From the NCBI GenBank assembly GCA_047495785.1, contig JBLDXI010000042.1, positions 2,666,001 through 2,730,000 of the forward strand: DNA of 64,000 bases, read 5' to 3'. Positions 13,882-35,538 of this stretch are shown in pieces (the first letter of the stretch is position 1; each line of letters opens with the position of its first letter). A model generated the notes under the pieces. That model did no database searches, was not told the DNA's origin, and worked only from the letters and a program-made list of their open reading frames with translations. This DNA comes from Lepidodermella squamata (taxonomy: Eukaryota > Animalia > Gastrotricha). The translations under genes and the position numbers were made by a program.

Positions 13882-15793
13882 CTAAGAAATAACTCCTAGA
13901 TTTCTGTTGATTTCCTCCCAATACTGGTTACACTGGACTGAATTCGGAAAGAAATCGGCCAACCAACGCATTTCGCGCTTCAAGGCTTGTAGCACAGAAA
14001 CATTGAAGAATGTAATGCCTTTTTCCAATTTTAAATCCGCGAGGGCATGGTCTGCTGCAGGGTATCGTTTTTGGAAAGCCATCGATAGGGCGCTCTTAAA
14101 AGCACAAAAATATTCCATCGCAGTGGTATCGTGCCAGCCTTGAAGGAAAAATATAGCGCCGCAAAGTAAGGACAATTCTGATTGAGTCGAGATTAATCCA
14201 TCCAAGTGATATCTTCCTTTCAGAATCATCTCACTCGCTGTATTATCGAAATAGTTGAAATGTAGCCGAAAGTTTTGCAAAGAATCCGCGTCTTTCAAGA
14301 AGAAGAAGTTGCATTGAAGTGCCCCTGTGTTAGGTTGAAAGCTACAGTATGCCGAAGTAGCCGCCATTATTGGAATAACAGACTTGGCGAACATGTTACT
14401 CCTTTTCTCTTTATCCAACTGCTTGAATCCCGGTAAGTTACGTATAAAAGCTGCAATACATGAAACGCGCTTTTCGAAGCTTTGATTTATGACGGTGCTC
14501 CATATTTCCAGAGCAGTCATAGCGCTCGTCAAAGTCACCGACTGGCAGTTAGGTGTAATCTGGAGCAAGTATCTTCCAACTTTTGAGACGGAATTGCAGA
14601 AATTGTCCAGCGGGGCCAAAGGTTCGGTCTTGATAAAGCATGCGGGGCTTGAATCGGCAGAATACTCGATGAGTGGGATGACCTTAGACTCTTGCAAAGC
14701 ATAATTTTCTCCGCCACAGCTCATTAGAGAATAATTTTGCGCTGAATTCAGTGCTATTGAGCTGCCATGAGAGAATTCGTCCGTCTGAGTGACAGTATCT
14801 CTTGAAGATATGGCAAACTGCTTCCTTCTCAAGACAGGACTTGCCAATAACTGGTCGTAATTATGTAGATGCTTCACGTAATTTGCCGTGTAACGTCGCA
14901 GGCTTAAAGACCGAGGGCCTCGTTTGGACCCAGTTAAACTCATGCCAGCGGCGACGCACGCTTCCAGTCGGCAATGTTTACATCGTTCTATTCGCTCTTT
15001 CTTAGCAAGCGACCCACCACGTTCGTCGTGAGCTAAGCCGCAAGGAAGAAGCCGGCCAATATTTCTCCGATAAAATCCCTTACAACCTTCGCAGGTCATC
15101 GCACCAAAATGATAACTATGCCATTGTAAACTTTTGTAAGTTATGAATGAGAAATGCTTAGAATCGTACCCGCTGCTCGATGTTCCGCAAATTATGCAAG
15201 GGATCAGTCGAATACTGACACGGGGACCTGGTTTCTGGTCTGATGAACCATATGTAACATCACTAGAGGATGCCGTATTCGGAAGTTGTACAACCGAGAT
15301 TTCGCTTGAAAGCAGTTTTCGGTATCTTCTTGCCCGGCATGGCCTGCATAAATCAGTTTTCGGAGAATTATTCGGACAGGTGCAGGGCTTGTTGAATAAT
15401 TTTCCACCGTTTAGCACAGCCCGACGGTAGAATTTCTGCGGAAGGTGACATATTTTAAGTGCCACAACTTCGGCTTGTACTCACCTTGCAAGCTGTGCAA
15501 ATCGATTCGCTGATCTTCGCCTGGTTTGTTCTTATTTTGTGGCTCTTTGCGCCAATTTCATGCATTCCACTGCTTGAATGCCTTCCCCGCACGCCCTCGA
15601 TTTTGATCCATGCATCCTGTTGTTTCATGGACGAGGCAGGTAACAGTCGAGAGCAAACAGTACAGGTTCGTGTTGCGGGACACATTTTTCTGAAGCATTG
15701 AAAATTTAATCAGAGTGATCCGAAATTCCAAATAAAGTAAACTGACTTCAAGTTACTGAATTTTGCTGTATCTTGGAAAGACGACCCGGCCAT
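13882..15793 (-). CDS. Nuclear receptor with two tandem DNA-binding domains (2DBD-NR type) plus ligand-binding domain
   Basis: DBD1: CTVC...ICTACK|KFYRR...CTC...CRPCR, joined across the GT-AG intron 15484-15436. DBD2: CIICGTSSSG|YHFGAMTCEGCKGFYRR...CKHCRLEACVAAGM after removing a 54-nt in-frame intron. LBD signature FIRNLPGFKQLDKEKR. Putative first exon starts at ATG 15793. Confidence 0.85.
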
Positions 15794-15907: not shown

Positions 15908-17765
15908 GGTTTACAGGCTAAATTTCAACAATAGAGTGCGCAACAGTCATGCAGCACTCATGACTTTTTTTGCTCGTGACTCTAAACCTGTCTGTAACAA
16001 TGCCGTGCTAAACGTGCTGAGGCTATAATTAAGCGTGGGCACTCTGAACACCTCGTAGCCTTTCGCCTAATTTCCTCGAGTTGGTTTGGCTGAAACCACG
16101 TGATGTCTGAATTGCCGTTAACTATGAAACATCTTTGGTGACCAATTTTCTGGGGATTTTTTTCATTATACACGCCCACGCATTTAACTTCTAATGCATG
16201 GCAGAGGCTCAGTACGCAGAAATACTCAATCCTCGGAAGAGTGTTTATACTGATTTGGTATTTGAAATGAATTTAATGGAAATTCCGGTTGGTTATTGAC
16301 ACAAGCTTGAGGTAAAAAATAAGGTGAATGATCAAATCCAGAATCTGTATATTAGACAAAAATGCAACCTTTGTTTATTCTGCTGGCTGCTATTGACGTC
16401 GTCGCCTGTTGTTCAACAAATCTTTCGACAAGCGTTGTTTACAAGCCGTTGGAATCGCAGCTGTTCGAAATCCTCTCAAACCGCTGCTCACTGAAAGACG
16501 GCTTCGCACCTAGACAAGGAAATGGCACGGTCAAAGTCCAATTTTCCTTTAATCTATATCAAATTTTCGAGCTTTCCAGCGTCAAAGAAACGTTCGATTT
16601 TGAAAAATCTACAGTAATTTACATGACAAGGATAATTTTCAACTAGGTTTTCAACTTTAGCTGATTTGAGATTCACCTGGTCTCATCCATGCATATCATG
16701 GGATCTTCCTGAATTCGCAGAGTGGTCACATTTTAACGAAATTTATGTTGAGTCTGCAATGATATGGCGCCCGCATATACAGGTAAATTCGAAAAGCCCT
16801 CAAATTGCATTAAATTGCTTTTTTGCAGCTCATGAATGCAGTTCAAGACAGTTTTATAGTGGAGAAGTAATCGCAAGAATTTCGGGATTTCAAGTTTTTA
16901 TTTTTATTTCAAGGGTTGGGCTTCAGGCGACACTTTACATCTTGAAAGACGGCCGTGTGAGGTGGCAGCCGATGGGAAGGTTTGAGTCGATATGCTCTCA
17001 AGGCAAGCTCTAAATTATTCAACCTCCTTAAAATTCAAAAGCCTGATATATAGATTTATGGAATTTTCCGTTTGACTTGCAACATTGTTCCCTGCGATTT
17101 GAATCCTGGGAAAGCGCAGAGTCTGTCTCTATAGTATCGACTGCGCTTACTATCTATGAGAAAGATAGCTTCATTGATGAAAATCACGTCTGGAAACTAA
17201 TAGCATGCGAACATCAGCTAAAAATTCGAACTTATAACGATGATAATTCGACGTTTTTCTGATTCTGATTCTGATTTTATTATGCATTTTGTTTCACAAC
17301 AGTTAGCAATAGGTTAGTTCTCGGCGCCTCACCTCAGAGGTCGTAAAATCCACTAGTTCATCTGACTTAGATTTAAGATATCGCAGAAACACAGTATGAG
17401 AATTATAGCGCTGCAATTGTTACCTTCCATCTTCAGCGGAGTTACTTCTACTTCCTAGGATCTATTCTTGTCCCGAACGGAGCCTTGATGGTTCTTCAAC
17501 TTGGCACATTCATCATGCCACCTGAGAACACAAATCGGCCATATTTTGGCGTTAGTGTTGTACTGGCGCTGGCAGTTTTTATGACTTCCGTCGCTAATGC
17601 CACGCCTCAAACATCCCAGGTCGTGCTGACTGCAGTTTGCCTGACGGCTCATTTTACTTTAGGAGTCATCATCACATTGTACGCAATCATCACCTGCCCG
17701 CTGGCGAAGTTACAGCGTCACGTAACCAAACGGCGTCAAAGCTTGAGCCACACAGCTAGCGCCCA
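15908..17765 (+). repeat. Segmental duplication copy A (upstream region plus L8); direct repeat of 32726-35538
   Basis: Alignable by eye from GGTTTACAGGCTAAATT through ...CACACAGC(T/G)AGCGCCCA in both copies. Confidence 0.92.
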
Positions 17766-20052: not shown

Positions 20053-21440
20053 TCAACGTTTCGCTCCGCCCTGAGCTTCTCGACCTCCGGTTCCGGATGG
20101 ACCGGCGCCGTCGCGTCTTGCCGCCGGTTGGCCGGGTGTCGCCGGAGTGCGAGGGGTGTAGGCTGGCGATGTTATATTAGATGGGCTGTATTCAGGCGAG
20201 CCAGGTGTGTAGCGTGGCGAAGTTGGCGAGTACGTCGGTGAATACGCTGCAGGTGAAGATGGAGAATAGACCGCGGGAGATGTTGGCGAATAAACCGGAC
20301 TGGAAAATCAGAAGAAAACAATGAAAAAACCTATATTTCTATTATAAGGCGAATTTTATCAGTTATATGAGGACTAATAATCAAATGATTCATATAGGGC
20401 AAGTCTTGAAAAATCATCATAAAAGAGGATTAATCTGTTACAGAAAAGTAATCAAATACAAACCTGGTTGGGCTGTAAGTCGGAGAAGTAGGGCTGCAAT
20501 TCGGGCTCGACGGTGAATAAGACGGCGATGTTGGGCTGTACGTCGGGCTAAAATCGGAAAATAAGTTCTGAATATGAACATAAAAATCGTTGAAATACTC
20601 ACCTTGTTGGACTGTAGGTCGGACTGGTCGGGCTGAATTTCGGACTCGATGGCGAGTAAGAAGGCGAAGTCGGACTGTACGACGGGCTGAAATTTTCAAA
20701 ACATCGCATTAAACCATGTAAAATTACACGCATAAACAATTTAGTATAAAGCTTGAATCAGTAAGGACTTAATAATCATCGGTAAACTAATTTCTGATTC
20801 TGATTCTGATTCTGATTTTATTATGCATTTTGTTTCACAACAGTTAGCAATAGGTTAGTTCTCGGCGCCTCACCTCAGAGGTCGTAAAATCCACTAGTTC
20901 ATCTGACTTAGATTTAAGATATCGCAGAAACACAGTATGAGAATTATTGACAATACTTGAGGGCAGCCGGTTCCACGCCGCGCGCACACGCCTTGTAGAG
21001 GGCAAGTCGAAAATCTCATCACGAAAAAGTTACTCGGGGAACTCGGGGAGAATAATGAACTCAAATTACCTGGTCGGGCTGTAGGTAGGAATAGTCGGAC
21101 TGAACTTCGGACTAGAAGGCGAGTAGGACGGCGAAGTTGGGCTGTAGCTCGGACTAGTTGGACTGTAGGTCGGACTGGTCGGGCTGAATTTAGGACTCGA
21201 TGGCGAGTAGGAAGGCGACGTCGGTCTGTATGATGGTGAAGTTGGGCTGTAACTCGGGCTGGTCGGGCTGTAGTGAGGGCTAGCCGGTGGGTAGGCCGGC
21301 GTAGATGGCGAGTAGCTCGGGCTGTAAGTCGGCGAAGCGAGCCCACCCGGTAGACCAGGGCTAGCCGGTGATTGCGGCATGTATAGAGGCGAAGTCGGCG
21401 AAGAAGATGGCGAATGTTGCCCCGGGCTGGGTACATAGGG
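20053..21440 (-). repeat. RPB1 CTD heptad repeats (YSPTSPS-like), split over four exons
   Basis: Translations [35 protein letters not shown] etc.; last exon ends ...GGAKR-stop at 20053. Confidence 0.9.
20790..20946 (-). mobile_element. Second copy of the LINE/SINE 3' tail, inside an RPB1 CTD intron (may extend to ~21040)
   Basis: (TCTGAT)n TTTATT ... CACAGTATGAGAATTAT, identical to 17254-17406. Confidence 0.8.
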
Positions 21441-24400
21441 GCTCATCGGGCTCGCAGAGGGTGACATGCCACCGGATGGTGACCAACCAGGGCTGTAGCC
21501 GGGCGAGAGACCGACTTCAGACGGAGCGCTGGGCGAGAAGGCGCCCACTCCAAAACCACCTTGGGTAGCACCACCGGGGAACATATCGCCGACGTAGGCA
21601 GGGGTTTGAGCGGACAAATCGTGCCAGGGGGTGATTTGGCTCGGACCTGCCTCCAACATGCCAGTCATGCCCATTGTTCCCAAACCAAATCCCATCGGAA
21701 TTTCCATGGCTTGCCTACACTTCTCAGCGTCGTCGGGTTTCTCAGTCGTCGAGTAACTCGAACGACCCGGTGCCTAACCGACCAAGTTGGCCCATCATAA
21801 TGTTTTCAGAGACACCACGCAACGGGTCACTTTCACCATGACTCGCCGCGTCCAACAAAATGTCGACAGTTTCTTCGAACGAGCACCTCGCCAGCGCGCC
21901 AGTGTCTTGCCGGTTGATACCGTGACGGGTAATAGCCATCAAATGGCCCTTAGCAGTCATAACCTCGCAAAGCAGGGCTAAATGACGGTAGTTGACGTAG
22001 GAGCCGTCGAAAGAAATGACGTTATTCACCTCGTTTTCGATGGATTTACGCACAGCTTCGATACCGAGTACCGAAAAAATTTCAACAACGTCGTTGGTGA
22101 ATGTTCTCGAGCTGTTCACGTCACCGTCACTCAAGACCTGCAGCAACGCAGTACCGTCAGTTTCAAGAATCCACTCGGCAATGCCCTTGAATTCACCAGT
22201 GTCAGTAATAACGATGCGCTTCTTGTCTTCAGTTTTCGGAAGATGCATGTAGACCTTCGAAATAGCTTCGATGCCTTGGACGGTGAAATCACTGAGCAGA
22301 TTAGCCTCGATGCACCGCAAGAACATGTAGTCGTCCATGCGATTCGCAGATTCGACCACGACCTGCCCGCCGTCGTTATCCATTTGCTCGGCGACCTTCT
22401 CTTCAGGGTTCGAGGTGATGCGAATACGCAAGATGAGCTTCTCAGCGTTATCGTCGTTGAACATGCAGTTAAGATCTTCGCCGAAAGCGAGGGAAATTTT
22501 CTCCGAAATCTGTTCCATCGTCAGCTTTTTGTCGGTCATACGCTTGCGATCGAGCTCGATACGTAGCAACCATGGCGACAACCGAGACGGATCGACTTCA
22601 GACATCTCGTAGTAAATCGACACGAAGTCTTGATCCTCCGCAATCAGCTGAAATTAAAACGGAAAAACGGTTATTTTCGCAAAAAATATGAAAAAATTGG
22701 TTTAAAATTTCAATTTTAAATCAGGTTAATTAGACTTAATAATCAAGTTTGATCAGATAGAGGGCATTGTCACACATTTCATCACAGAAATGTCTAATGC
22801 GAAATTTCCACTTCAAGCTGAAAATTTCACGTTGCAACCCTGTTAAATTTTTTTTTTTAAATTCCTCCTTAAAAAATGTGAAGTTGCGTGGTGAAATGTT
22901 GAGCTTAAATACAGTGGAAATTACTACACATATAAGCTATATGCGCATACCGTGTTCTTAGGATCTGGATCGTAGTAAATCGCCGTATTTGCTGTGACTT
23001 GTCGAAGAGTTGTATGCTCAAGTCGACAGAGAACATCCTTGGCTCGTTCCGCCTCTTTCGCAGCCTGGCCAGTCAAGAAAACAGTGAGTGAGGGGGTCTT
23101 CGGTTTCTTCGACACGTTGATGATTTCCTTCAATCGCGGCACACCGAGTGTTACGTTCTCAGCCGACACCCCGGCGTAGTAGAAAGCGTTCAGTGTCATC
23201 TGTGTAGCCGGCTCACTGAAAGACTGGGCAGCGAGGGGACCAACCATTTCACCCGGGTGGGCCATGGCCTGGTTGAAGCGCGACTCGATTTCACCGACCA
23301 GCCATTCGAAGGCAGCAGTGCTCAACCGATAGTCGACACAGGCTCGTTTCGTGCACAGTGACGACCGAAGGTGAGTATCAATCAGCAACGTTGCGTTTCG
23401 GTTAGCTTCTTTACTCAAGCGGTCCTCGCCCTTCACGATGACTAATCGGGCGCAGAGGTCTCGGACGCTTTGCACGACTTGAAGTGGGTTGAGATCTGTG
23501 GGACGGCGTGTGTCGATTTTGAAAATTTTCTGCGCGTTCCAAACTAAACGTTCGATGTTACACGGCAGGACAACTCGAGCGTTTCCATTTTTGAACAACA
23601 TTCGCAGCTCGCGACGATCCTTTGACAACTGCTCGAATTCGAGGTCGATTTCAAGAGGGAGTTTTGTGTCACCTGAAATCTCTCGCACAAGATCGTCGTT
23701 GAACACGTCATTCAACTGCTTTTGATTATTCAGGTCGAGCCTGAACGATTTTTCGAACGCTTTGTCGCTAGGCTTGTACGATAGCAAGTTCTGGAACTCG
23801 ACTCGAGTCGCATCGAGACCATCTTCACCGTAACGGAATTGAACCATCTGCTCGAGCTGGTTACGAATAGTTCCATCGTATTTGACCATGACAGACTCCA
23901 TGGACTTGATGAGACGACGTTGGATGTAACCGGTTTCGGCAGTTTTGACGGCGGTATCGATAAGACTTTCACGACCTCCCATGGCGTGGAAGAAGAATTC
24001 AGGCGGGGTCAGACCGGCGAGGTAAGAGTTCTCGACGAAACCCTTCGACTCGGGACCGAAGTCGTCCTTGATGAAATGAGGCAGGGTACGCCGCGAGAAG
24101 CCGAACGGAATACGTTTACCTTCGACGTTTTGCTGACCGACACAGGCGATGACCTGAGAAATGTTAATTTTCGAACCTTTCGCACCGGAAACGACCATCG
24201 CCTTGAAGTTGTTGAACTCTGACAACGAACGCTGGGCAGAACCACCAGTTATGTGACGGGCGAAGTTCAAGATGTGATTCACAGTGCTCTCGAAAGTTTG
24301 ACGCAACGTTTTACCAGGGGTGGGCTCCAAGTCGTCGTGGTGCGCTTTTTCAATGACTTCATACACACGATTTTTGGCGGATTTAATCGTTTCCTGGATC

Positions 24401-26523
24401 TCCTCGTAGGTCTGAGGGTCGGCGATTGTGTCACCAATACCGATCGTGTGACCATCGATAAGCAGCCAGTTGTTGATGAGGGTCTGAATGTGGCCGTAAA
24501 ACTCGCCGGCTTCAACGTGGGTCAACTCCAAAGCGACAATGTGCATGAGAGAACCGCTTGACGGACCGAGTGTGCGTTTGTCCAACATTCCACAAATTAG
24601 CTCGCCGTTTTCGATTAGGACCTTCGTATCACCGGGGGATAGCCACTTGTAAGGACCTGCATCTTCATCGTTAGGGTGGGCGTTGTGGGTTCTGACGCAG
24701 TTAACCTTGCCAGGAATTGTCAGTGAGAACAGCTGTTTACCGGTCCACAGTGGTTTTGGCTTCAAAATAGCCGGCTGAGGGATAATTCCGTTCCAATGAG
24801 GGATTTGAAGTAGCAGGTTCATCACGTTTTCTTTTTCGATGAAGACGTCACGTTTTGTCATTTTGTTGGAAGCTGTCAGCGTATCTTGCACAATACCCAT
24901 GACAGGTCGATTGGCTTGGGGTGTGATGATGAGACGAGGTACCAAAGCCAACTCAAGAATTTCAGCTCTCGCCTCATATGATTGAGGCAAATGAAGATTC
25001 ATTTCGTCACCGTCGAAATCGGCGTTGTACGAGGTTGTTACTGAAAGATTGAGACGGAAGGTAGACCATGGGAGCACCTTGACTCTGTGACACATCATAG
25101 ACATCTTGTGAAGAGTGGGCTGTCGATTGAAAACGACAGCATCGCCATCTCGCATATGTCGTTCCACCTTGTAACCGGGTTGAAGGTCGAGATCAGCAGG
25201 GCGAGGATTTAATCGCAAATCGATTCGAGTACCATCATGTCGAATGATGTCTCGAGCACCAGGATATTGGTTCGGACCACGTTCCACGAGCTCTCGCAGG
25301 TAGTCCATGTTGAGCGATGACACAATCTCAGGAAAAGTCAAATTCTGAGCAATTGTTCGAGGAACGCCGACTTGATCAATCCGTAGATTCGGATCAGGCG
25401 TAATGACAGTACGACCGGAGAAATCGACACGTTTACCCATCAAATTGCCTCGAATACGACCTTCTTTCCCCTGTAATCTTTGTTTGATTGATTTGAGGGG
25501 ACGACCGGATTTTCGAGTAGCCTTAGGAAGACCGGGAATTTCATTGTCGAAAAGCGTGGCTACGTGATATTGAAGCATCTTTACATCCTCAGCAATGATA
25601 TGTGCAGCCGCACCATTTTGCTCATTCCTCTTCAACTGATTGTTCCACTTGACTATATCAGCCAATTTGTGAGTCAAATCGTCTTGATTTCGAGTCGTGC
25701 CGAACATGACAACTGAAGGTCGAACGCACAATGGAGCAACGGGAAGAACCGATATTATCATCCAATCGGGACGAGCCCAACGCGGGTCCATACCCAATGC
25801 AAAGCAGTCAATGTCAGACACACGCCGGAATACTTCGAGAACGCGCTCGGCAGTTAAAATTATTTTACGCTCTTGGGTGTCATCGTTTTGATGTTTCCAT
25901 TCTGCTGTCAACTCGAGGCCTTGACGGCGGTACTGAGGTTGATAGCGCCCGCAGCCACCTTTCACAAAGCCCTTCTTCTTTTTCTTTAGACCAAAATCGT
26001 CTTCCTCCTCCTTCACCGGCTGACCACCTGGTACGTCTTCTTCTGCGCCTTCGCAGATATTTCTGGATTTGCACAGCTCGTACACGAGGGCGAGTCGACG
26101 ACGCGGACTTAATCGGGTTTTGGCGATAGCTTCTTTAATGGCAGGGCCATCCTGACAACAAAAAACCCCGATATAATTGTTGGCAGGATACATGAAACGC
26201 TTACTGAATCGACGAGCATTTTTGCGCAGTAAAAGCATACGCAGCGAAGAATTTTTATGGTTTTTGTAAGCCAGCCAATGTGGTATACCGGTCGGGCAAG
26301 TTCAACGTGGCCAAAATGACCAGGACATGTGTTCATATCACACGAGCATGTCAAACACTTTCCGGTTCGCTCAATAACACCCTGCCGGGGATCCATCAAA
26401 CTGCAAAGCTTCGGCTTGCCAGCCTCCATGGTGCCAGGAAAGGTGATACCACCCTCTGTGACTGACATCCGCCGCTGGAAAAATGATCAATTAGTAATAA
26501 GTTTGCCATTTTAATTATGAGTA

Positions 26524-27892: not shown

Positions 27893-28769
27893 TAGTCAAC
27901 TTACAATTTCTTCGGGTGATAAAATGCCGAACTGCACTCTCTTAGCATTTCTGAGCAGACAGCTTGAGTCAATCCAAGCCATCAATATAAAATATCTAAA
28001 TACATCAGAAATAACATGTTTAATTGCCTACGCATTGAGCTTAAGATAGGGCTGATTTCAAAATAATGATTGGAACTCCAGGCTGCGCAATAACAAAGTT
28101 GGTCAGTAACAAGAAGCAGTAAGAGTTAAGATAATTCGAAGAAGGAATGTTTCAGTAAAAACATTTGCACTTGATACTGATAATCTCACCAGATGGATAC
28201 AACTTCATAAGAATACTTCATAAGAATACATAAGGAACAGCCACAGAGCGAGCAGCCTATTGCCTTCATCACTAAGCCACCAATTCAATGATGTTGATGT
28301 TACTTGGACTGTGAAAATGATCATTTCATGCTTTATAGTTTGAAATTGGAGATGCTTGGCATCTTTACACTCGGGCATCTGTCACGATGAGCCCCAAAAT
28401 GCATTTCTGCGCGGTTCAACTTGAGTTCGAGAAGTAAAACACTAGTGATTCGTCGCGGTCAGCTGTTCCGGCCGAAACACAAACAATATCAAACAGCCAG
28501 TTCTCATGCAGCTACTAATATGAAGATGAAACCCTGACCGGCCTTAATTTTTCATTTGTTTCGGTGTTTCAGTCTCCGAGCTCCGAGTAAAGAAGAATCC
28601 ATTGAAAATCAAACCTGACAGGTATATATCGCATCACCCCGATATATTGAGTCCCGATTGAGCCAAAGTGTTGATGGCAGATTATGATCGATGATCGATC
28701 GTTGATGGCTGCTTTCTTTTGTCAGGACTAACGACAGCAGGCTTCGAACGTTTTCGGTCTGCGCCGCGG

Positions 28770-31320
28770 GGTTTCAGGATCAGGATCAGGAATTACGATT
28801 TCTCCTCGCCCTGACGGACTCAAGCTTTCGCCATAAGGCGGAGCTTGTGAGAAAATCGCGAGCTTACGCTCTAGAAAAGTTTGAACTGGTTTACTATCTA
28901 CTTAATGAAATCCCTACCCCTGGTACTCCAATTATTGCTGACTGTTTCTCCAGGGCCCAGGCATTAGTGCCCAGGTGGCTTTTCCACTCACTCAGCGAAG
29001 CCTACACACGCCGTCGTAGCAAGAAAGCTACTAAAAGACTAGGTTGGAGAATTATTTACAAGAGTAGAGATAATTTACAAGAGGTAATTCCACGGAGCCA
29101 AAATATATGATAATTTAATGACGGAGCTATAAAAGAAAATAAAGTATATTACATTTTGGTTGAATATAGGGTTTGTAAAAATAGAAATAGAAATTTGGGA
29201 AACTCATTTAGTTCGGCACGTAGTTGTAGACGAAGGCGGCTTTGGAGTACGGATTGAACGCGACCTGTGGCTGCAGAGAGGCGTTGAGTTCCTTCTTCTT
29301 TCGCTCGCTCTTCGCCTTGATGATGGCGTCGTGTTTGGCCTGTTCGCGTAGGAATTCGAGCGTGGCTTGCCGGCACGCCTTTATGGAAGCGGACAGCCTG
29401 ATCTTCGCTGGCAGCTGGTTCCACCACTGGATGGCCTTGGTTGGGAACGAGCGCTGGCCTGTGGCGAGCTTTCACGATGGCTTGACGTACTTCCCGGTGG
29501 CGGCGCCTCAAGTGTTGTGGTCATGCTGTTGGTTGGCTGTTAGTCATCGGCTTGACTAGCGACGAGAGTGCCTCGGGGGTCTCAGGATCCCTGCTGCACT
29601 TCCAATGGGTTGTAGCCAGGTGGACCAGTCGTTTGCCTTGCAGATTCACCCATCGCAATCGCACGAGAACTTCATCGGCGGGCACGTCAGGACTGACGTC
29701 GAGAACGGCACGAACGGCTTTGTTTTGCGCGTGTTGAAGTCGATCCAACTGGGTCTTGCAGCCTTGATCGATGACGGCGTCGCAGTAGTTGAACTTCGAC
29801 CCAATGATGCCGTCGTACATCATTGTTCGAGTCTTCAGGTCGGTGTGCCGAGCCGCTTTACGCAGTGCGTAAGTACCACTTCTTGCGGCTTTGATCAGAT
29901 GATCGACGTGCTTTTCCATGGTGAGCTTTGAGTCCAGATAGACTCCCAGGATCTTCACCTGGTCAAGTGGCGGCAGATCGACTTCACCAAATCGAATCGT
30001 TGGAGCAGAAGCCTGTTGGTCAGACAAAAACATATAATTAGATTTGTCCCGATTCACTTTAAGACACTTGGCGTGTAACCAATTGCCGATACTGCGAAGG
30101 TCCGCCTCTAGCTTCGCCTTTACTTCTTCAGGCGCCTTCCCACTGGCCACGATCGTTGTGTCGTCGGCGAACAGCGATGCGATGCTGTTTTTGCATTGAA
30201 CTGGCAATTCGTTGATGAAAATGATGAAAAGCGCAGTGAGCCGAGGATCGAGCCTTGAGGGACGCCGTACGAGATAGGCGCGATGTATACCATTCCGACG
30301 CATTCACTGTTGTCCAGTGCCATTCGGCAATCGTCGATAATTTAAAGTAAGCATGACTCGCAGCTGTGGCCAGCTCGAAACCCGAACTGATTCGCTTTGA
30401 GAAAACCTATTCGTTTGAGGTAGGTTTTCAATTGACCGCTGAGACAGCGCTCCAGCAACTTCAGCAGACACGATGAGATGGAAATCGGTCGATAGTTTGA
30501 AGGAATCGTGTGATCACCAGATTTGTAGATGGGGGTGACCGTCGACTCAAGCCAAGTGGTAGGTAGTTTTCCAGTCTTGATGGTTAGGTTAAACAGAGTC
30601 GCTAGACATTCGCTTATTGCAGGGATCACTAGCTTCAAGACGTTGTTTGGTATACCATCGGGACCGGTAGTTGACTTGTTGTTCATTCGATCAACTTGTT
30701 CTTCAATTTTCTTCTTTGTTATGCAAGTGAAAGAGAAACGCCACTCTGGCCGTGGTTGTGGTCGGCTGAAATCAGGTGACTTTGTTTCGGCAGCGATTTT
30801 CTGTCCAACAGCGGCGAATGCTTCGTTGAGAACATTTGCGGCTATCGGAATGGTGTTTTCGCCTGGTGGTGACTTGTCGGTTAGGAACTCTCGTAGAACC
30901 TCCCATATTTTGCGGCTGTTTCCACGATGAGCCTTGGCCATCCGATTTTGATAATGGCCATAGATGAATTGCCTAGATTCCCGGCGATGATCTTTATTCA
31001 AAGCCTTCAGTTTGGCTTCGTCTTCTTCCGAGAACGGACCAACACTTTTCAGACTCAGGAGCCTGTTTCGCTGAATTGACATATTTATGAGGACTCTTGA
31101 TGGCTTTGGCAGACCACCTTCACGCTTTTCTGTTGTTTTGACCTGTACCTCAGGGGCGTGACGATCGAGCAACTGAATGAAGGAGTCGTTGATGCGGTCT
31201 GCGTAGCTGTCAACATCTTCATCTGCCTTTTGAATCGGCCAACTGATTGTCGAGGCGTCCTTTAAGAACGCTTCCGTGTTGATCTCGTTTAGCTTCCTGA
31301 GCTTGGTTTTCCTGGACAGT
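28770..31320 (-). mobile_element. Decayed, 5'-truncated non-LTR retrotransposon (CR1/L2/Jockey-group RT)
   Basis: GPDGI, TPIYKSGD, NYRPIS, QFGFRAGHS, GVPQGSILG, FADDT, KILGVYLD, WNQLP. Stop, deletion and frameshifts at ~30340, ~30240 and ~29520. (ATCCTG)n tail at ~28775-28790. Confidence 0.88.
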
Positions 31321-32725: not shown

Positions 32726-35538
32726 GGTTTACAGGCTAAATTTTAACAATACACAATAGAGTGCGCAACAGTCATGCAACACTCATGACTTTTTTTTGCT
32801 CGTGATTCTAAACCTGTCTGTAACGATGCCGTGCTAAACGTGCTAAGGCTATAATTAAGCATGGGCATTTTTAACGGCACGTAGCATGGAGGAATAGAAA
32901 TGGAGTTGGAACTGCGCGCAGCGAAAAAGAGTTATCTGATGGTGCGCGCGCGCTGCCGCTCGCGTACTTACAATAGAGCGTGTTGCGTAACCGCTCGGGT
33001 GCTTGTCTCACTATGTAAAACCAAAATATTTTCTAGCGCACTCATTTTTTATCGGTTTTTCTTATATTTTATGTCAACGAAACCGCTGAATCATGAGCAG
33101 TCGGTACGTCTAAATTGCGTCTTTATGCCATTTATAGTCTTGGGGATAATCGCAAATAACTGTTGAAAAGTACCAATTTTCTGAATTTTCCAGAGCCTAA
33201 ACGGTAATAGCTGTTATCAAGCAGTAAAATTGTACCGATAGAGCTCGTTTTCATCTATCGGTACGTCGTTGTTATAATGTTATACGTTGTACAGGTGCGC
33301 GCCCACCAGTTAACAAAGAAAGGGTGATGGCGAAAATTGCGTGCGCGCTCGTCGTTGTGCGTTCGAACATGCATCACGCACACATTTTGGCCGCCGCGAA
33401 ATTGTTGCGCCGCCTGTTCGCGAAACGAATCACCAGTGTGTTTTTTAAGAAATGGCCTGGTGTTTAAAAACCTATTTTAGGAGTTTAAAAATGTGCTATT
33501 TTTGCAGTATTTTTGCTGTAATTTTCCGAAAACAAATAGTCTGGTGTTTAAATTGCATCGGTCTGGTGTTTAAATTTAAACCCTTTAAACCCCTTAAAAA
33601 CCACACTGGAATCACGATGTTGGACGTCGAACAGCAGAAAACTACGTCAAGCTCTTTACGGCCGGGCCTTAATAACGATTTTTGATTATTTTTCAATCGT
33701 TGTGATTTTGTGAAACCGAGTCGAATTTAAAATCAGAGAATAAATGAAGAATTAACACAAAAAACGATTAAAACAGAGATAGTTGCGAGTGGTTTAGCTG
33801 GTTTTAATGGGTTACAAAACGACGCGTTACTATGGTGTGCGCGCGGGTTTTTTGTGCTCGGTGTGTGCGCGCGCGCGTGATCGCTCGTAAATTAGTCTAT
33901 TGTTCAGCGTCTAGATACGGTGCGAGATATGGCCTTTGTGCTCGCTATTTCAGCGAGTTCCAGCTCCATTACTATTACTCCATGGCACGTAGCCTTCTGC
34001 CTAATTCCCGCGAGTTAGTTTGGCTGAAACCACGTGGTGTCTGAATTGCCGTTAACTATAAAACATCTTTGGTTACCGTTTTTTTCATTCTCCACGCCAA
34101 CGCATTCACTTCTAATGCATGGCAGAGGCCCAGTACACAGAAAATCACTGCATCCTCGGAAGAGCATCTATACTATTTGGTATTCGAAATTAATTTAATG
34201 GAAAATCCGGTTGGTTGTTGACACAAGCCAGAGGTAGAAAATAAGGCGGACGATAAAATCTAGAATCTGCATATTTGAAAAAAATGCAAGCTTTACTTAT
34301 TTTTCTAGCTGTTGTTGAAGTCGCTTGTTGTTCGACTAATCTTTCGACAAGTGTTGTTTACAAGCCATTGGAATCACAGCTGTTCGAAATTCTCTCAAAT
34401 CGCTGCTCGCTGAGTGACGGTTTCGCACCTAGACAAGGAAATGGCACGGTCAAAGTCGAATTTTCGTTTAATCTATATCAAATTTTCGAGCTTTCTAGCG
34501 TCAAAGAAACGTTCGATTTTTAAATAATCAGCAGTGATTTTTGGGTCATGGACAATTTTCATCTAGGTTTTCGACGTTGGCTGAATTGAGATTTATCTGG
34601 TCTCATCCATGCGTATCATGGGATCTCCCGGAATTCGCGCAATGGTCACATTTTAGCGAAATTTCTGTTGAGCCTTCAATGATATGGCGCCCACATATCC
34701 AGGTAGATTGAGAAAGGTGTAAAAATGCGTTAAATTGTTCTTATGCAGCTCATGAATGCGGTTCAAGACAGTTTTATTATCGAGAAGTAAGAAACAAGCA
34801 GTTTCCATACTTCCAGCATTCATGTTTGCTTTAAGGGTTGGGCTTCAGGCGACACTTTACATCTTGAAAGACGGCCGTGTGAGGTGGCAGCCGATGGGAA
34901 GGTTTGAGTCGATATGCTCTCAAAGCAAGCTCTAAATTATTCACACCTCCTTAAAATTCAAAAGCCTGATATATAGATTTATGGAATTTTCCGTTCGACT
35001 TGCAACATTGTTCCCTGCGATTTGAATCCTGGGAAAGCGCGGAGTCTGTCGCTATAGTATCGACTGCGCTTACAATGTACGAGAAAGATAGCTTCATCGA
35101 CGAAAATCACGTCTGGAAACTAATAGCATACGATCATCAGCTAACAAATCGAACTTATAATGATGATAATTCAACGTATAGCGCAGCCATTGTTACCTTC
35201 CATCTTCAGCGGAGTTACTTCTACTTCCTAGGATCTATCCTTGTCCCGAACGGAGCCTTGATGGTTCTTCAATTGGGCACATTCATCATGCCACCTGAGA
35301 ACACAAATCGGCCATATTTTGGCGTTAGTGTTGTACTGGCGCTGGCAGTTTTTATGACTTCCGTCGCCAATGCTACTCCTCAAACATCCCAGGTCGTGCT
35401 GATTGCAGTTTGCCTGACGGCTCATTTTACTTTAGGAGTCATAATCACGCTGTATGCAATCATCACCTGCCCGCTTGCGAAGTTGGAGCGTCACGTAACA
35501 AAGCGGCGTCAAAGCTTGAGCCACACAGCGAGCGCCCA
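32726..35538 (+). repeat. Segmental duplication copy B (contains hAT MITE insertion and most of L9)
   Basis: Matches 15908-17765 once the MITE here and the LINE tail in copy A are removed. Confidence 0.92.
32885..33984. mobile_element. hAT-like MITE
   Basis: TIR CATGGAG(G/T)AATAG(A/T)AATGGAG(T/C)TGGAACT; 8-bp TSD GCACGTAG on both sides; empty site in copy A at ~16051. Confidence 0.92.

What the first reader, a model, noticed from the sequence alone, without database searches (positions are those of the whole stretch)
21742..26240. RPB1 copy with substitutions clustered in the trigger loop, bridge helix and funnel, including His->Tyr
Seen: [24 protein letters not shown] versus the typical animal [24 protein letters not shown] (5 changes). 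Also GGRESLID versus [18 protein letters not shown] versus [17 protein letters not shown] versus RLKGKEG and [10 protein letters not shown] versus ILNDARDKTG. The catalytic Asp triad and a 3.2-kb exon stay intact. Known: the equivalent yeast H1085Y slows elongation and reduces alpha-amanitin sensitivity, and plant Pol IV/V largest subunits diverged in these elements. Inference: either a specialised Pol II paralog or a young decaying duplicate; the clustering is what merits testing.
Basis: partly seen in the sequence, partly recalled or inferred. Interest (0 to 1): 0.8.

Follow-up and report, generated by a model that had tools for sequence, protein, structure and literature searches.

The report
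Frameshifted RPB1 copy with altered trigger loop
[quoted passage not shown] However, this copy is broken by a frameshift just before its tail domain and looks like a decaying duplicate or null allele beside intact, expressed sister copies. Whether those sister copies share the odd changes is still open.

Summary
None of 376 RPB1-type sequences fetched here has that Tyr.

New here: this allele has a net 16-nt insertion at about 21733-21751. It shifts the frame and gives a TGA at 21744-21742, before an otherwise intact CTD of about 25 heptads.

A DNA run of the same organism also holds a more abundant form without the insertion. Spliced RNA contigs of a related organism match that form.

Of 39 codons that differ from that form, 30 are silent. 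Of the 9 replacements, the 7 I could polarise are all derived in the window copy. Two more break the heptad pattern.

The closest relative (88% identical, silent sites saturated) has the same gene layout and is canonical at all five motifs.

At sites invariant in 24 animals, the window has 20 private changes and the relative 7. Linear clustering is not significant. Enrichment in trigger loop, bridge helix and funnel is marginal (11 seen, 5.6 expected, P=0.02).

Best reading (0.55): a decaying duplicate or null allele of a fast-evolving lineage's RPB1.

I could not see whether the intact copies share the trigger-loop changes.

The parts
27905..27982 (-). Exon 1 (ATG at 27982; MAWIDSSCLLRNAKRVQFGILSPEEI; donor GTAAGT).
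   Evidence: The loose end of an RNA contig at 26474 continues into this exon.
26205..26474 (-). Exon 2 (clamp N-terminus with the zinc-site Cys/His).
   Evidence: Pfam RNA_pol_Rpb1_1. An RNA contig covers 26204-26474. Splice sites.
26152..26204 (-). 53-nt GT..AG intron. The relative L001 has an intron at the same position.
   Evidence: Joint in an RNA contig of X2. L001 has an intron after KMLVDA.
22951..26151 (-). Exon 3, 3201 nt.
   Evidence: It is 88% identical to P0001 and 70-73% identical to canonical animal RPB1.
23155..23226 (-). Trigger-loop segment [24 protein letters not shown]. Five residues are derived: L>F, G>S, T>A, H>Y, K>E.
22648..22950 (-). 303-nt GT..AG intron, absent from L001.
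   Evidence: Joint in an RNA contig of X2; DNA contigs of X1 cover it. The L001 ORF runs through this position.
21745..22647 (-). Exon 4, the last part of the core. In this allele it ends at a premature TGA (21744-21742).
21733..21751 (-). Net 16-nt insertion (imperfect duplication CGACGAC..TGAGAA) that shifts the frame. The sister form reads FELLLDAEKC in frame.
   Evidence: Sequence. In one search, X2 lacks 11+5 nt here. X1 holds both forms: the window form at depth 31.9, and a second form whose loose end reads AGTAGTAACTCGAAC.
21069..21731 (-). CTD linker and first heptads. They are out of frame with the core in this allele and continuous with exon 4 in the sister form.
   Evidence: 16 of 22 differing codons are silent, so this frame is under selection in the sister form.
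20603..20686 (-). CTD exon of 84 nt.
   Evidence: The loose end of an RNA contig at 21073 continues into it.
20464..20547 (-). CTD exon of 84 nt.
20053..20299 (-). Last CTD exon with the natural stop.
   Evidence: It is homologous to the last CTD exon of L001.
20798..20947 (.). 150-nt mobile insertion in the first CTD intron, interrupting a box C/D-like element.

Best explanation
The window holds one disabled member of the RPB1 genes of an unidentified, fast-evolving, short-intron protostome.

This lineage's RPB1 is unusual but functional. It has few introns, about 25 CTD heptads and a long branch in the animal RPB1 tree.

In this organism the gene exists in several near-identical versions. 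They may be tandem duplicates, divergent alleles, or both. The version in the window acquired three kinds of damage:
- a net 16-nt insertion that stops translation before the CTD;
- replacements of conserved CTD residues;
- probably most of the radical changes in the catalytic core (trigger-loop His>Tyr, Gly>Ser, Lys>Glu; bridge-helix Gly>Ser; funnel Asp>His, Lys>Ile; Pro>Ser next to the Asp triad; Lys>Gln in RLKGKEG).

On this reading it makes no working subunit. The intact sister version supplies Pol II.

Shown: the gene model, the frameshift, the existence, splicing and expression of the intact form, the direction of the polarisable replacements, and the excess of changes at invariant sites.

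Inferred: that the catalytic-core changes belong to the decay phase and are absent from the intact copies.
For: Frameshift:
- The net 16-nt insertion and premature TGA are in the sequence.
- They are also in independent contigs of DNA run X1 at depth about 32.
- A second X1 form (depth about 54) and the RNA contigs of X2 lack the insertion and read FELLLDAEKC in frame.

Expression:
- X2 contigs are spliced at the 53-nt and 303-nt introns, at the exon 1/2 junction and at the first CTD intron.
- They differ from the window by 3-6%, so they report the sister form.

Direction of change:
- 30 of 39 differing codons are silent.
- Of the 9 replacements, 8 could be compared with the relative L001. In 7 of these the sister form has the L001 residue.
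- These include the heptad changes Tyr>Ser and Ser>Arg. A further Ser>Ile in FSPTIPT has no L001 counterpart but departs from the heptad pattern.

Comparison with the relative:
- L001/P0001 is 88% identical and has the same layout, yet is canonical at all five flagged motifs.
- At 551 columns invariant in 24 animals, the window alone is changed at 20 and L001 alone at 7. At columns at least 90% conserved, the counts are 31 and 11.
- By conservation class, the window's excess lies only in conserved columns.

External knowledge:
- No Tyr at the trigger-loop His in 376 sequences.
- Yeast H1085Y is a loss-of-function allele with slow elongation and a severe growth defect (PMC3325174, PMC5127505).

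A mobile element also sits in the first CTD intron.
Against: - The directly measured private replacement load is low: 3 of 301 codons in exon 4 and 6 of 221 in the CTD-linker exon. At that rate, five changes in 24 trigger-loop codons and 11 in the trigger loop, bridge helix and funnel (5.6 expected even under uniform decay, P=0.02) are more than plain decay predicts.
- In exon 4, five of six window-derived changes at conserved columns are shared with the intact, expressed form. The lineage's working gene therefore also carries unusual residues.
- In DNA run X1, no variant is listed between 23015 and 23556 although summed depth there is 125-148. This could mean that all copies share the trigger-loop stretch. 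However, only contigs shorter than about 233 nt cover it, and variants within 30 nt of a contig end are not listed. The table was also cut at 40 of 213 rows.
- Apart from the insertion, every exon, splice site and the start codon are intact.
Confidence: 0.55

Rival explanations
1. The core substitutions are a working, species-level (or paralog-level) retuning of the Pol II active centre. Intact, expressed copies in this organism carry the Tyr trigger loop together with the bridge-helix and funnel changes that line the trigger-loop docking surface and the alpha-amanitin pocket. That would give a slower and probably amatoxin-insensitive enzyme. The window merely holds a recently frameshifted allele of such a gene.
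For: - Changes are enriched in trigger loop + bridge helix + funnel beyond a uniform expectation (11 seen, 5.6 expected, P=0.02). The relative L001 has 2.
- The measured private replacement rate of the window copy is too low to give five trigger-loop changes by uniform decay.
- The branch leading to the window copy shows dN/dS of about 0.2, not 1.
- Possibly all copies in DNA run X1 are identical to the window over 23054-23501, judging from full summed depth and no listed variant.
- In yeast, K1092 at the trigger-loop tip pairs with funnel residues D716 and E712. Gain-of-function changes in the bridge helix and trigger loop suppress H1085Y (PMC5127505, PMC12391331). The window changes K1115 and N739, the animal counterparts of yeast K1092 and D716.
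- Known amanitin-resistance sites lie in the same funnel helices (PMC3276164).
Against: - No natural RPB1 among 376 has Tyr at this His.
- H1085Y is severely defective in yeast.
- The only copy actually seen with these residues is frameshifted and carries other damaging private changes.
- The RNA contig of organism B differs from the window at about 23 unlisted places in exactly this stretch, so the expressed form there may be canonical.
- The module boundaries used for the enrichment test were set from memory, after seeing the data.
Confidence: 0.27
2. The window copy is a functional, specialised CTD-less RPB1 paralog. The frameshift is a feature that yields a core-only, slow polymerase subunit for a special task, by analogy with plant Pol IV/V.
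For: - The core reading frame of about 1480 codons is open up to the premature stop, with all Pfam RPB1 domains present.
- The substitutions fall in the elements that also diverged in Pol IV/V. That comparison comes from my own knowledge and was not tested here.
Against: - The CTD exons downstream are still open, with intact splice sites. They differ from the sister form mostly at silent sites, so the frameshift is recent.
- No RNA of the window form was seen.
- The insertion is absent from the more abundant DNA form.
Confidence: 0.05
3. The window sequence is an assembly artefact. The insertion and substitutions would be errors, or the 'copy' would be a mis-placed second haplotype.
For: - All X1 contigs lack one base at 22767 relative to the window, so the assembly and this run are not identical.
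- Divergent haplotypes are easily assembled as false tandem duplicates.
Against: - X1 holds 26 contigs at least 99% identical to the window, including one across the insertion at depth about 32.
- Some 200 differences that follow a codon-position pattern cannot be sequencing errors.
- A mis-placed haplotype would still be a real, frameshifted allele.
Confidence: 0.08

Closest known systems
Canonical animal RPB1 (POLR2A, RpII215, AMA-1)
   Same: - All seven Pfam RPB1 domains are present in order.
- The NADFDGD triad and the zinc-site residues are intact.
- CTD heptads of the YSPTSPS type are present.
- Identity is 70-73% over 1368 aligned residues.
   Different: - The branch is long (stem 0.57 in the tree).
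- There are few introns and only about 25 heptads.
- 20 private changes fall at sites invariant in 24 animals, including the trigger-loop His.
- In this allele the CTD is out of frame.
P0001 on contig L001 (ENA metagenome assembly), the nearest relative
   Same: - 88% identical.
- Same 53-nt-type intron.
- Same CTD built from four exons.
- 13 of 14 shared departures from invariant animal residues involve the same residue.
   Different: - Canonical at all five flagged motifs.
- No frameshift and no 303-nt intron.
- Silent sites are saturated against the window, so it belongs to a distant species.
Yeast rpb1-H1085Y (laboratory allele)
   Same: The same residue change at the trigger-loop His that contacts the NTP.
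   Different: - It is a single engineered change. It is viable but very sick, with slow elongation (PMC3325174, PMC5127505).
- Here the change comes with four more trigger-loop changes and with changes in the bridge helix and funnel, in a copy that is also frameshifted.
- Its reduced amanitin sensitivity is from my own memory of Kaplan et al. 2008, which was not held in the paper library.
Unprocessed (duplicated) pseudogenes and null alleles of essential genes
   Same: - Introns are retained.
- A disabling indel is present.
- Replacements at conserved sites are in excess on one copy only, while an intact, expressed sister copy exists.
   Different: - Decay is slight: one lesion, with dN/dS of about 0.2 on its branch.
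- Changes are somewhat concentrated in one functional module.
Plant NRPD1/NRPE1 (Pol IV/V largest subunits)
   Same: They are RPB1-derived paralogs whose trigger loop and bridge helix diverged. This is from my own knowledge.
   Different: - They are ancient, strongly diverged and expressed, with new C-terminal domains.
- Here the divergence from the sister copy is a few percent, and no separate function is shown.

Membership tests
[quoted passage not shown] | RPB1 domains 1-7 in order | tested here: met
   Pfam PF04997, PF00623, PF04983, PF05000, PF04998, PF04992 and PF04990 are found on exons 2-4. The best solved-structure matches are Pol II RPB1, not Pol I or Pol III.
[quoted passage not shown] | Catalytic NADFDGD Asp triad | tested here: met
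   The sequence reads [13 protein letters not shown] at 25006-25035. The triad is intact; the preceding Pro is changed to Ser.
[quoted passage not shown] | C-terminal heptad repeat domain in frame with the core | tested here: not met
   About 25 heptads are encoded at 21731-20053 (PF05001 hit). In this allele they lie behind a frameshift and a TGA. The sister form is in frame.
[quoted passage not shown] | Invariant trigger-loop His (yeast H1085) and canonical trigger loop | tested here: not met
   The codon is Tyr (TAC at 23179-23181). Five of 24 residues are changed. 373 of 376 compared sequences have His and none has Tyr.
Functional (expressed, selected) gene copy | Transcripts of this very copy | tested here: inconclusive
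   The only RNA-like run is from another organism label. Its contigs are 94-97% identical to the window and match the sister form. No RNA run of the same organism was offered.
Functional (expressed, selected) gene copy | Purifying selection on this copy's own branch | tested here: inconclusive
   Window versus sister form gives 30 silent and 9 replacement codons. All polarisable replacements are derived in the window copy, giving dN/dS of roughly 0.2 on its branch. That is neither neutral nor as tight as the sister form.
Unprocessed pseudogene / null allele | Disabling lesion supported by independent reads, with an intact counterpart | tested here: met
   The net 16-nt insertion appears in X1 contigs at depth about 32. 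The intact form is in X1 at depth about 54 and in X2 RNA.
Specialised polymerase paralog (Pol IV/V-like) | An old, separately conserved paralog lineage with orthologs that keep the special residues | tested here: not met
   The only close relative (P0001) keeps the canonical residues. No other sequence above 72-76% identity turned up in two word searches, one exhaustive search and a metagenome scan.

The most novel reading that the evidence does not exclude
The intact, expressed RPB1 copies of this animal also carry Tyr in place of the universally conserved trigger-loop His. They would carry it together with matching changes in the trigger-loop tip, the funnel helices and the bridge helix. That would be a natural Pol II whose active centre and alpha-amanitin pocket have been rebuilt. 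The enzyme would be slow, and possibly toxin-insensitive. The duplicated genes would be the raw material for the change.
Probability: 0.25. Interest if true: 0.85.

Novelty: new member of a known kind. Interest (0 to 1): 0.42.

Why it matters
If the best reading holds, this is an ordinary, slightly decayed duplicate or null allele of an essential gene. Its main use is as an annotation warning: the copy in the reference is not the working gene. It also marks a poorly sampled animal lineage whose RPB1 has a short CTD and few introns.

If the intact copies share the substitutions, it would be the first natural Pol II known to me that lacks the trigger-loop His. That would give a natural test of how epistasis in the active centre, mapped so far only in yeast, lets an 'invariant' catalytic residue be replaced. 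It would also be a candidate case of target-site resistance to amatoxin-like compounds.

Reading three codons in the sister copy decides between the two.

Tried and rejected
Searches that gave nothing useful:
- The JGI metagenome scan with exon 3 found nothing above 56% identity.
- The exhaustive representative search with the 147-residue trigger-loop piece found nothing above 83% identity, and no fragment of the sister form.
- The word search with the neighbouring orphan nuclear receptor, meant to identify the organism, gave one weak hit.
- Rfam on the gene and its flanks gave no hit at either threshold.
- Searches of earlier findings by sequence and by words gave only the snoRNA note.

Analyses that did not settle the question:
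- The RPB1 tree (quick search only, the careful one did not finish) places window + L001 as an unresolved long branch, so the phylum stays unknown.
- I tried to infer from difference counts whether organism B's transcripts have a canonical trigger loop. Both models fit.
- I considered reading the read-laying table as proof that all copies in X1 share the trigger-loop stretch. I rejected it as proof. Only short contigs cover the stretch, variants near contig ends are not listed, and 173 of 213 rows were cut.
- The 150-nt exact repeat turned out to be a mobile insertion with an empty site, not a snoRNA.
- The retrocopy idea is rejected: several introns are kept, and two of them are shared in position with L001.
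Full report
WHAT IS THERE

[quoted passage not shown] Six-frame translation, Pfam, alignment to solved structures and spliced RNA contigs agree on the model.

- Exon 1: 27982-27905.
- Exon 2: 26474-26205.
- Intron of 53 nt.
- Exon 3: 26151-22951 (3201 nt).
- Intron of 303 nt.
- Exon 4: from 22647.
- CTD: continues to 21069, then two 84-nt exons (20686-20603 and 20547-20464) and a last exon (20299-20053).

All splice sites are GT..AG. The CTD has only about 25 heptads.

The Phe and Glu of this trigger loop are also unseen.

The window reads ...TTCGAGTTACTCGACGACTGAGAAACCCGACGACGCTGAGAAG.... A net 16-nt insertion, an imperfect duplication of CGACGAC..TGAGAA, shifts the frame. The CTD linker ([11 protein letters not shown]...) and the heptads follow in another frame.

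Public runs give the following.
- DNA run X1 (organism A) holds the window form across the insertion at depth about 32.
- X1 also holds a second form at depth about 54 that lacks the 16 nt and reads FELLLDAEKC.
- X2 (organism B) holds contigs that skip exactly the 53-nt and 303-nt introns, join exon 1 to exon 2 and join the CTD exons. They are therefore cDNA. They also lack the 16 nt.
- The X2 contigs are 94-97% identical to the window, so they report a sister form, not this copy.

DIRECTION OF CHANGE

The 40 variant places printed by the reads tool fall in 39 codons. Thirty are silent and nine are replacements.

Eight of the nine replacements could be compared with the relative L001. In seven of them the sister form carries the L001 residue, so the window copy is the derived one. 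These include Tyr>Ser and Ser>Arg in heptads. A further Ser>Ile in FSPTIPT has no L001 counterpart but departs from the heptad pattern.

The sister form is thus under purifying selection, CTD frame included. The window copy's own branch has dN/dS of roughly 0.2 if silent changes are split evenly between the two branches.

RELATIVES

The only close relative in 5.8 billion proteins is P0001 (88% identical). It lies on a 13.4-kb metagenome contig, L001.

- It has the same short intron after KMLVD, the same four-exon short CTD, and no 303-nt intron.
- It shares 13 of 14 joint departures from invariant animal residues.
- Silent sites between the two are saturated (pS 0.78-0.86) while dN is 0.095.
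- This gene type is therefore old and tightly constrained.
- P0001 is canonical at all five flagged motifs.

Canonical animal RPB1s are 78-83% identical to each other, 71-75% to P0001 and 70-73% to the window. In a quick tree the pair forms a long, unplaced branch. The neighbouring nuclear-receptor gene has no relatives at all.

I take this to be the ordinary RPB1 of a poorly sampled, fast-evolving protostome rather than an ancient extra paralog. I could not prove that.

EXCESS AND CLUSTERING

At 551 columns invariant in 24 animals, the window alone is changed at 20 and P0001 alone at 7. At columns at least 90% conserved, the counts are 31 and 11. By conservation class, the window's excess is confined to conserved columns.

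- A linear scan test finds the trigger-loop cluster unremarkable (p=0.2-0.7).
- A module test over trigger loop + bridge helix + funnel helices gives 11 changes against 5.6 expected (P=0.02). P0001 has 2 (Fisher p=0.034).
- I set the module boundaries from memory after seeing the data, so this is only suggestive.

THE OPEN POINT

Are the core substitutions private to the broken copy?

In exon 4, where the variant table is complete, only 1-3 of 16 window-derived changes are private. Five of six at conserved columns are shared with the intact form. So the lineage's working gene also carries unusual, though conservative, residues.

Scaling the private rate (about 1-1.7% of codons) to exon 3 predicts about 11-18 private changes. 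About half of them should fall at conserved sites. That is roughly the number of radical core changes seen, so decay can account for them. However, five in one 24-codon stretch is more than a uniform process gives (about p=0.002-0.02).

The reads table lists no X1 variant between 23015 and 23556, although summed depth there is 125-148. This might mean that all copies share the trigger-loop stretch. Three things weaken that reading.
- Only contigs under about 233 nt cover the stretch.
- Variants within 30 nt of a contig end are not listed.
- The table was cut at 40 of 213 rows.

The X2 RNA contig has about 23 unlisted differences in just this stretch. Count-based models could not decide whether organism B's trigger loop is canonical.

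I could not read it. The window itself holds only one RPB1 gene. The summed depths in X1 fit about four haplotype-equivalents of this gene structure, which agrees with two loci, but depth from contigs is a poor measure.

MECHANISM AND COMPARISON

Yeast H1085Y is a loss-of-function allele with slow elongation and a severe growth defect (PMC3325174; PMC5127505). [quoted passage not shown]

The trigger-loop tip Lys (yeast K1092) pairs with funnel residues. Amanitin-resistance sites lie in the same funnel helices (PMC3276164).

The window changes the tip Lys, two funnel helices and the residue next to the bridge-helix Glu that, from my own knowledge, contacts amanitin. A compensated, slow, toxin-insensitive enzyme is therefore conceivable.

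It remains a minority reading. The only copy seen with these residues is broken, and no natural RPB1 with Tyr is known.

VERDICT

- Best reading (0.55): a decaying duplicate or null allele of the lineage's RPB1, next to intact, expressed sister copies.
- Rival (about 0.27): the substitutions belong to working copies as well.

Both are settled by reading a few codons in the sister copy.

Noticed in passing
window 17257-17406 and 20798-20947; empty site at 35123-35233: A 150-nt element is present twice at 100% identity. The flanks of the first copy match an uninterrupted site elsewhere in the window. It therefore looks like a recently mobile MITE/SINE-like insertion. The depth in DNA run X1 over it is about 790.
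   Followed up: partly
window 20396-20418 (third CTD intron) and about 21020-20990 plus 20780-20750 (first CTD intron): Box C/D snoRNA-like elements with the same guide (GATGA..TTTTC.AGACTTGCCCT ... CTGA) sit in two CTD introns. The one in the first intron is split by the 150-nt insertion. Rfam finds nothing. They resemble the intronic snoRNA array that note s1-422657 reports in an RPB1 gene before the window.
   Followed up: partly
window 13882-15465 (-): A 527-codon open frame has a C4 nuclear-receptor zinc finger and no detectable relatives in 5.8 billion proteins (one hit at E=2.6e-4).
   Followed up: partly
window 29521-31172 (-): Non-LTR reverse-transcriptase ORFs lie about 1.5 kb upstream of RPB1 exon 1.
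   Followed up: no
window 22648-22950 versus L001 about 6750: The 303-nt intron of the window gene is absent from the 88% relative, whose ORF runs straight through. The 53-nt intron position is shared. This is an intron gain or loss within this RPB1 lineage.
   Followed up: partly
window 21731-20053; L001 7700-9198: The RPB1 of this lineage has only about 25 heptads. Many follow an alternating YSPTSPS / YSPSSPK(N)F(C)SPTSPT pattern, partly encoded by 84-nt exons.
   Followed up: partly
window 22767: All contigs of DNA run X1 lack one base here relative to the window (GGG versus GG). Either the run is from another individual or the assembly has a small error in this intron.
   Followed up: no
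window 23015-23392: The RNA contig of organism B is about 6% different from the window here. It is about 3.4% different elsewhere and has almost no private differences in 23588-26474. This suggests a recombination or gene-conversion tract around the trigger loop.
   Followed up: partly
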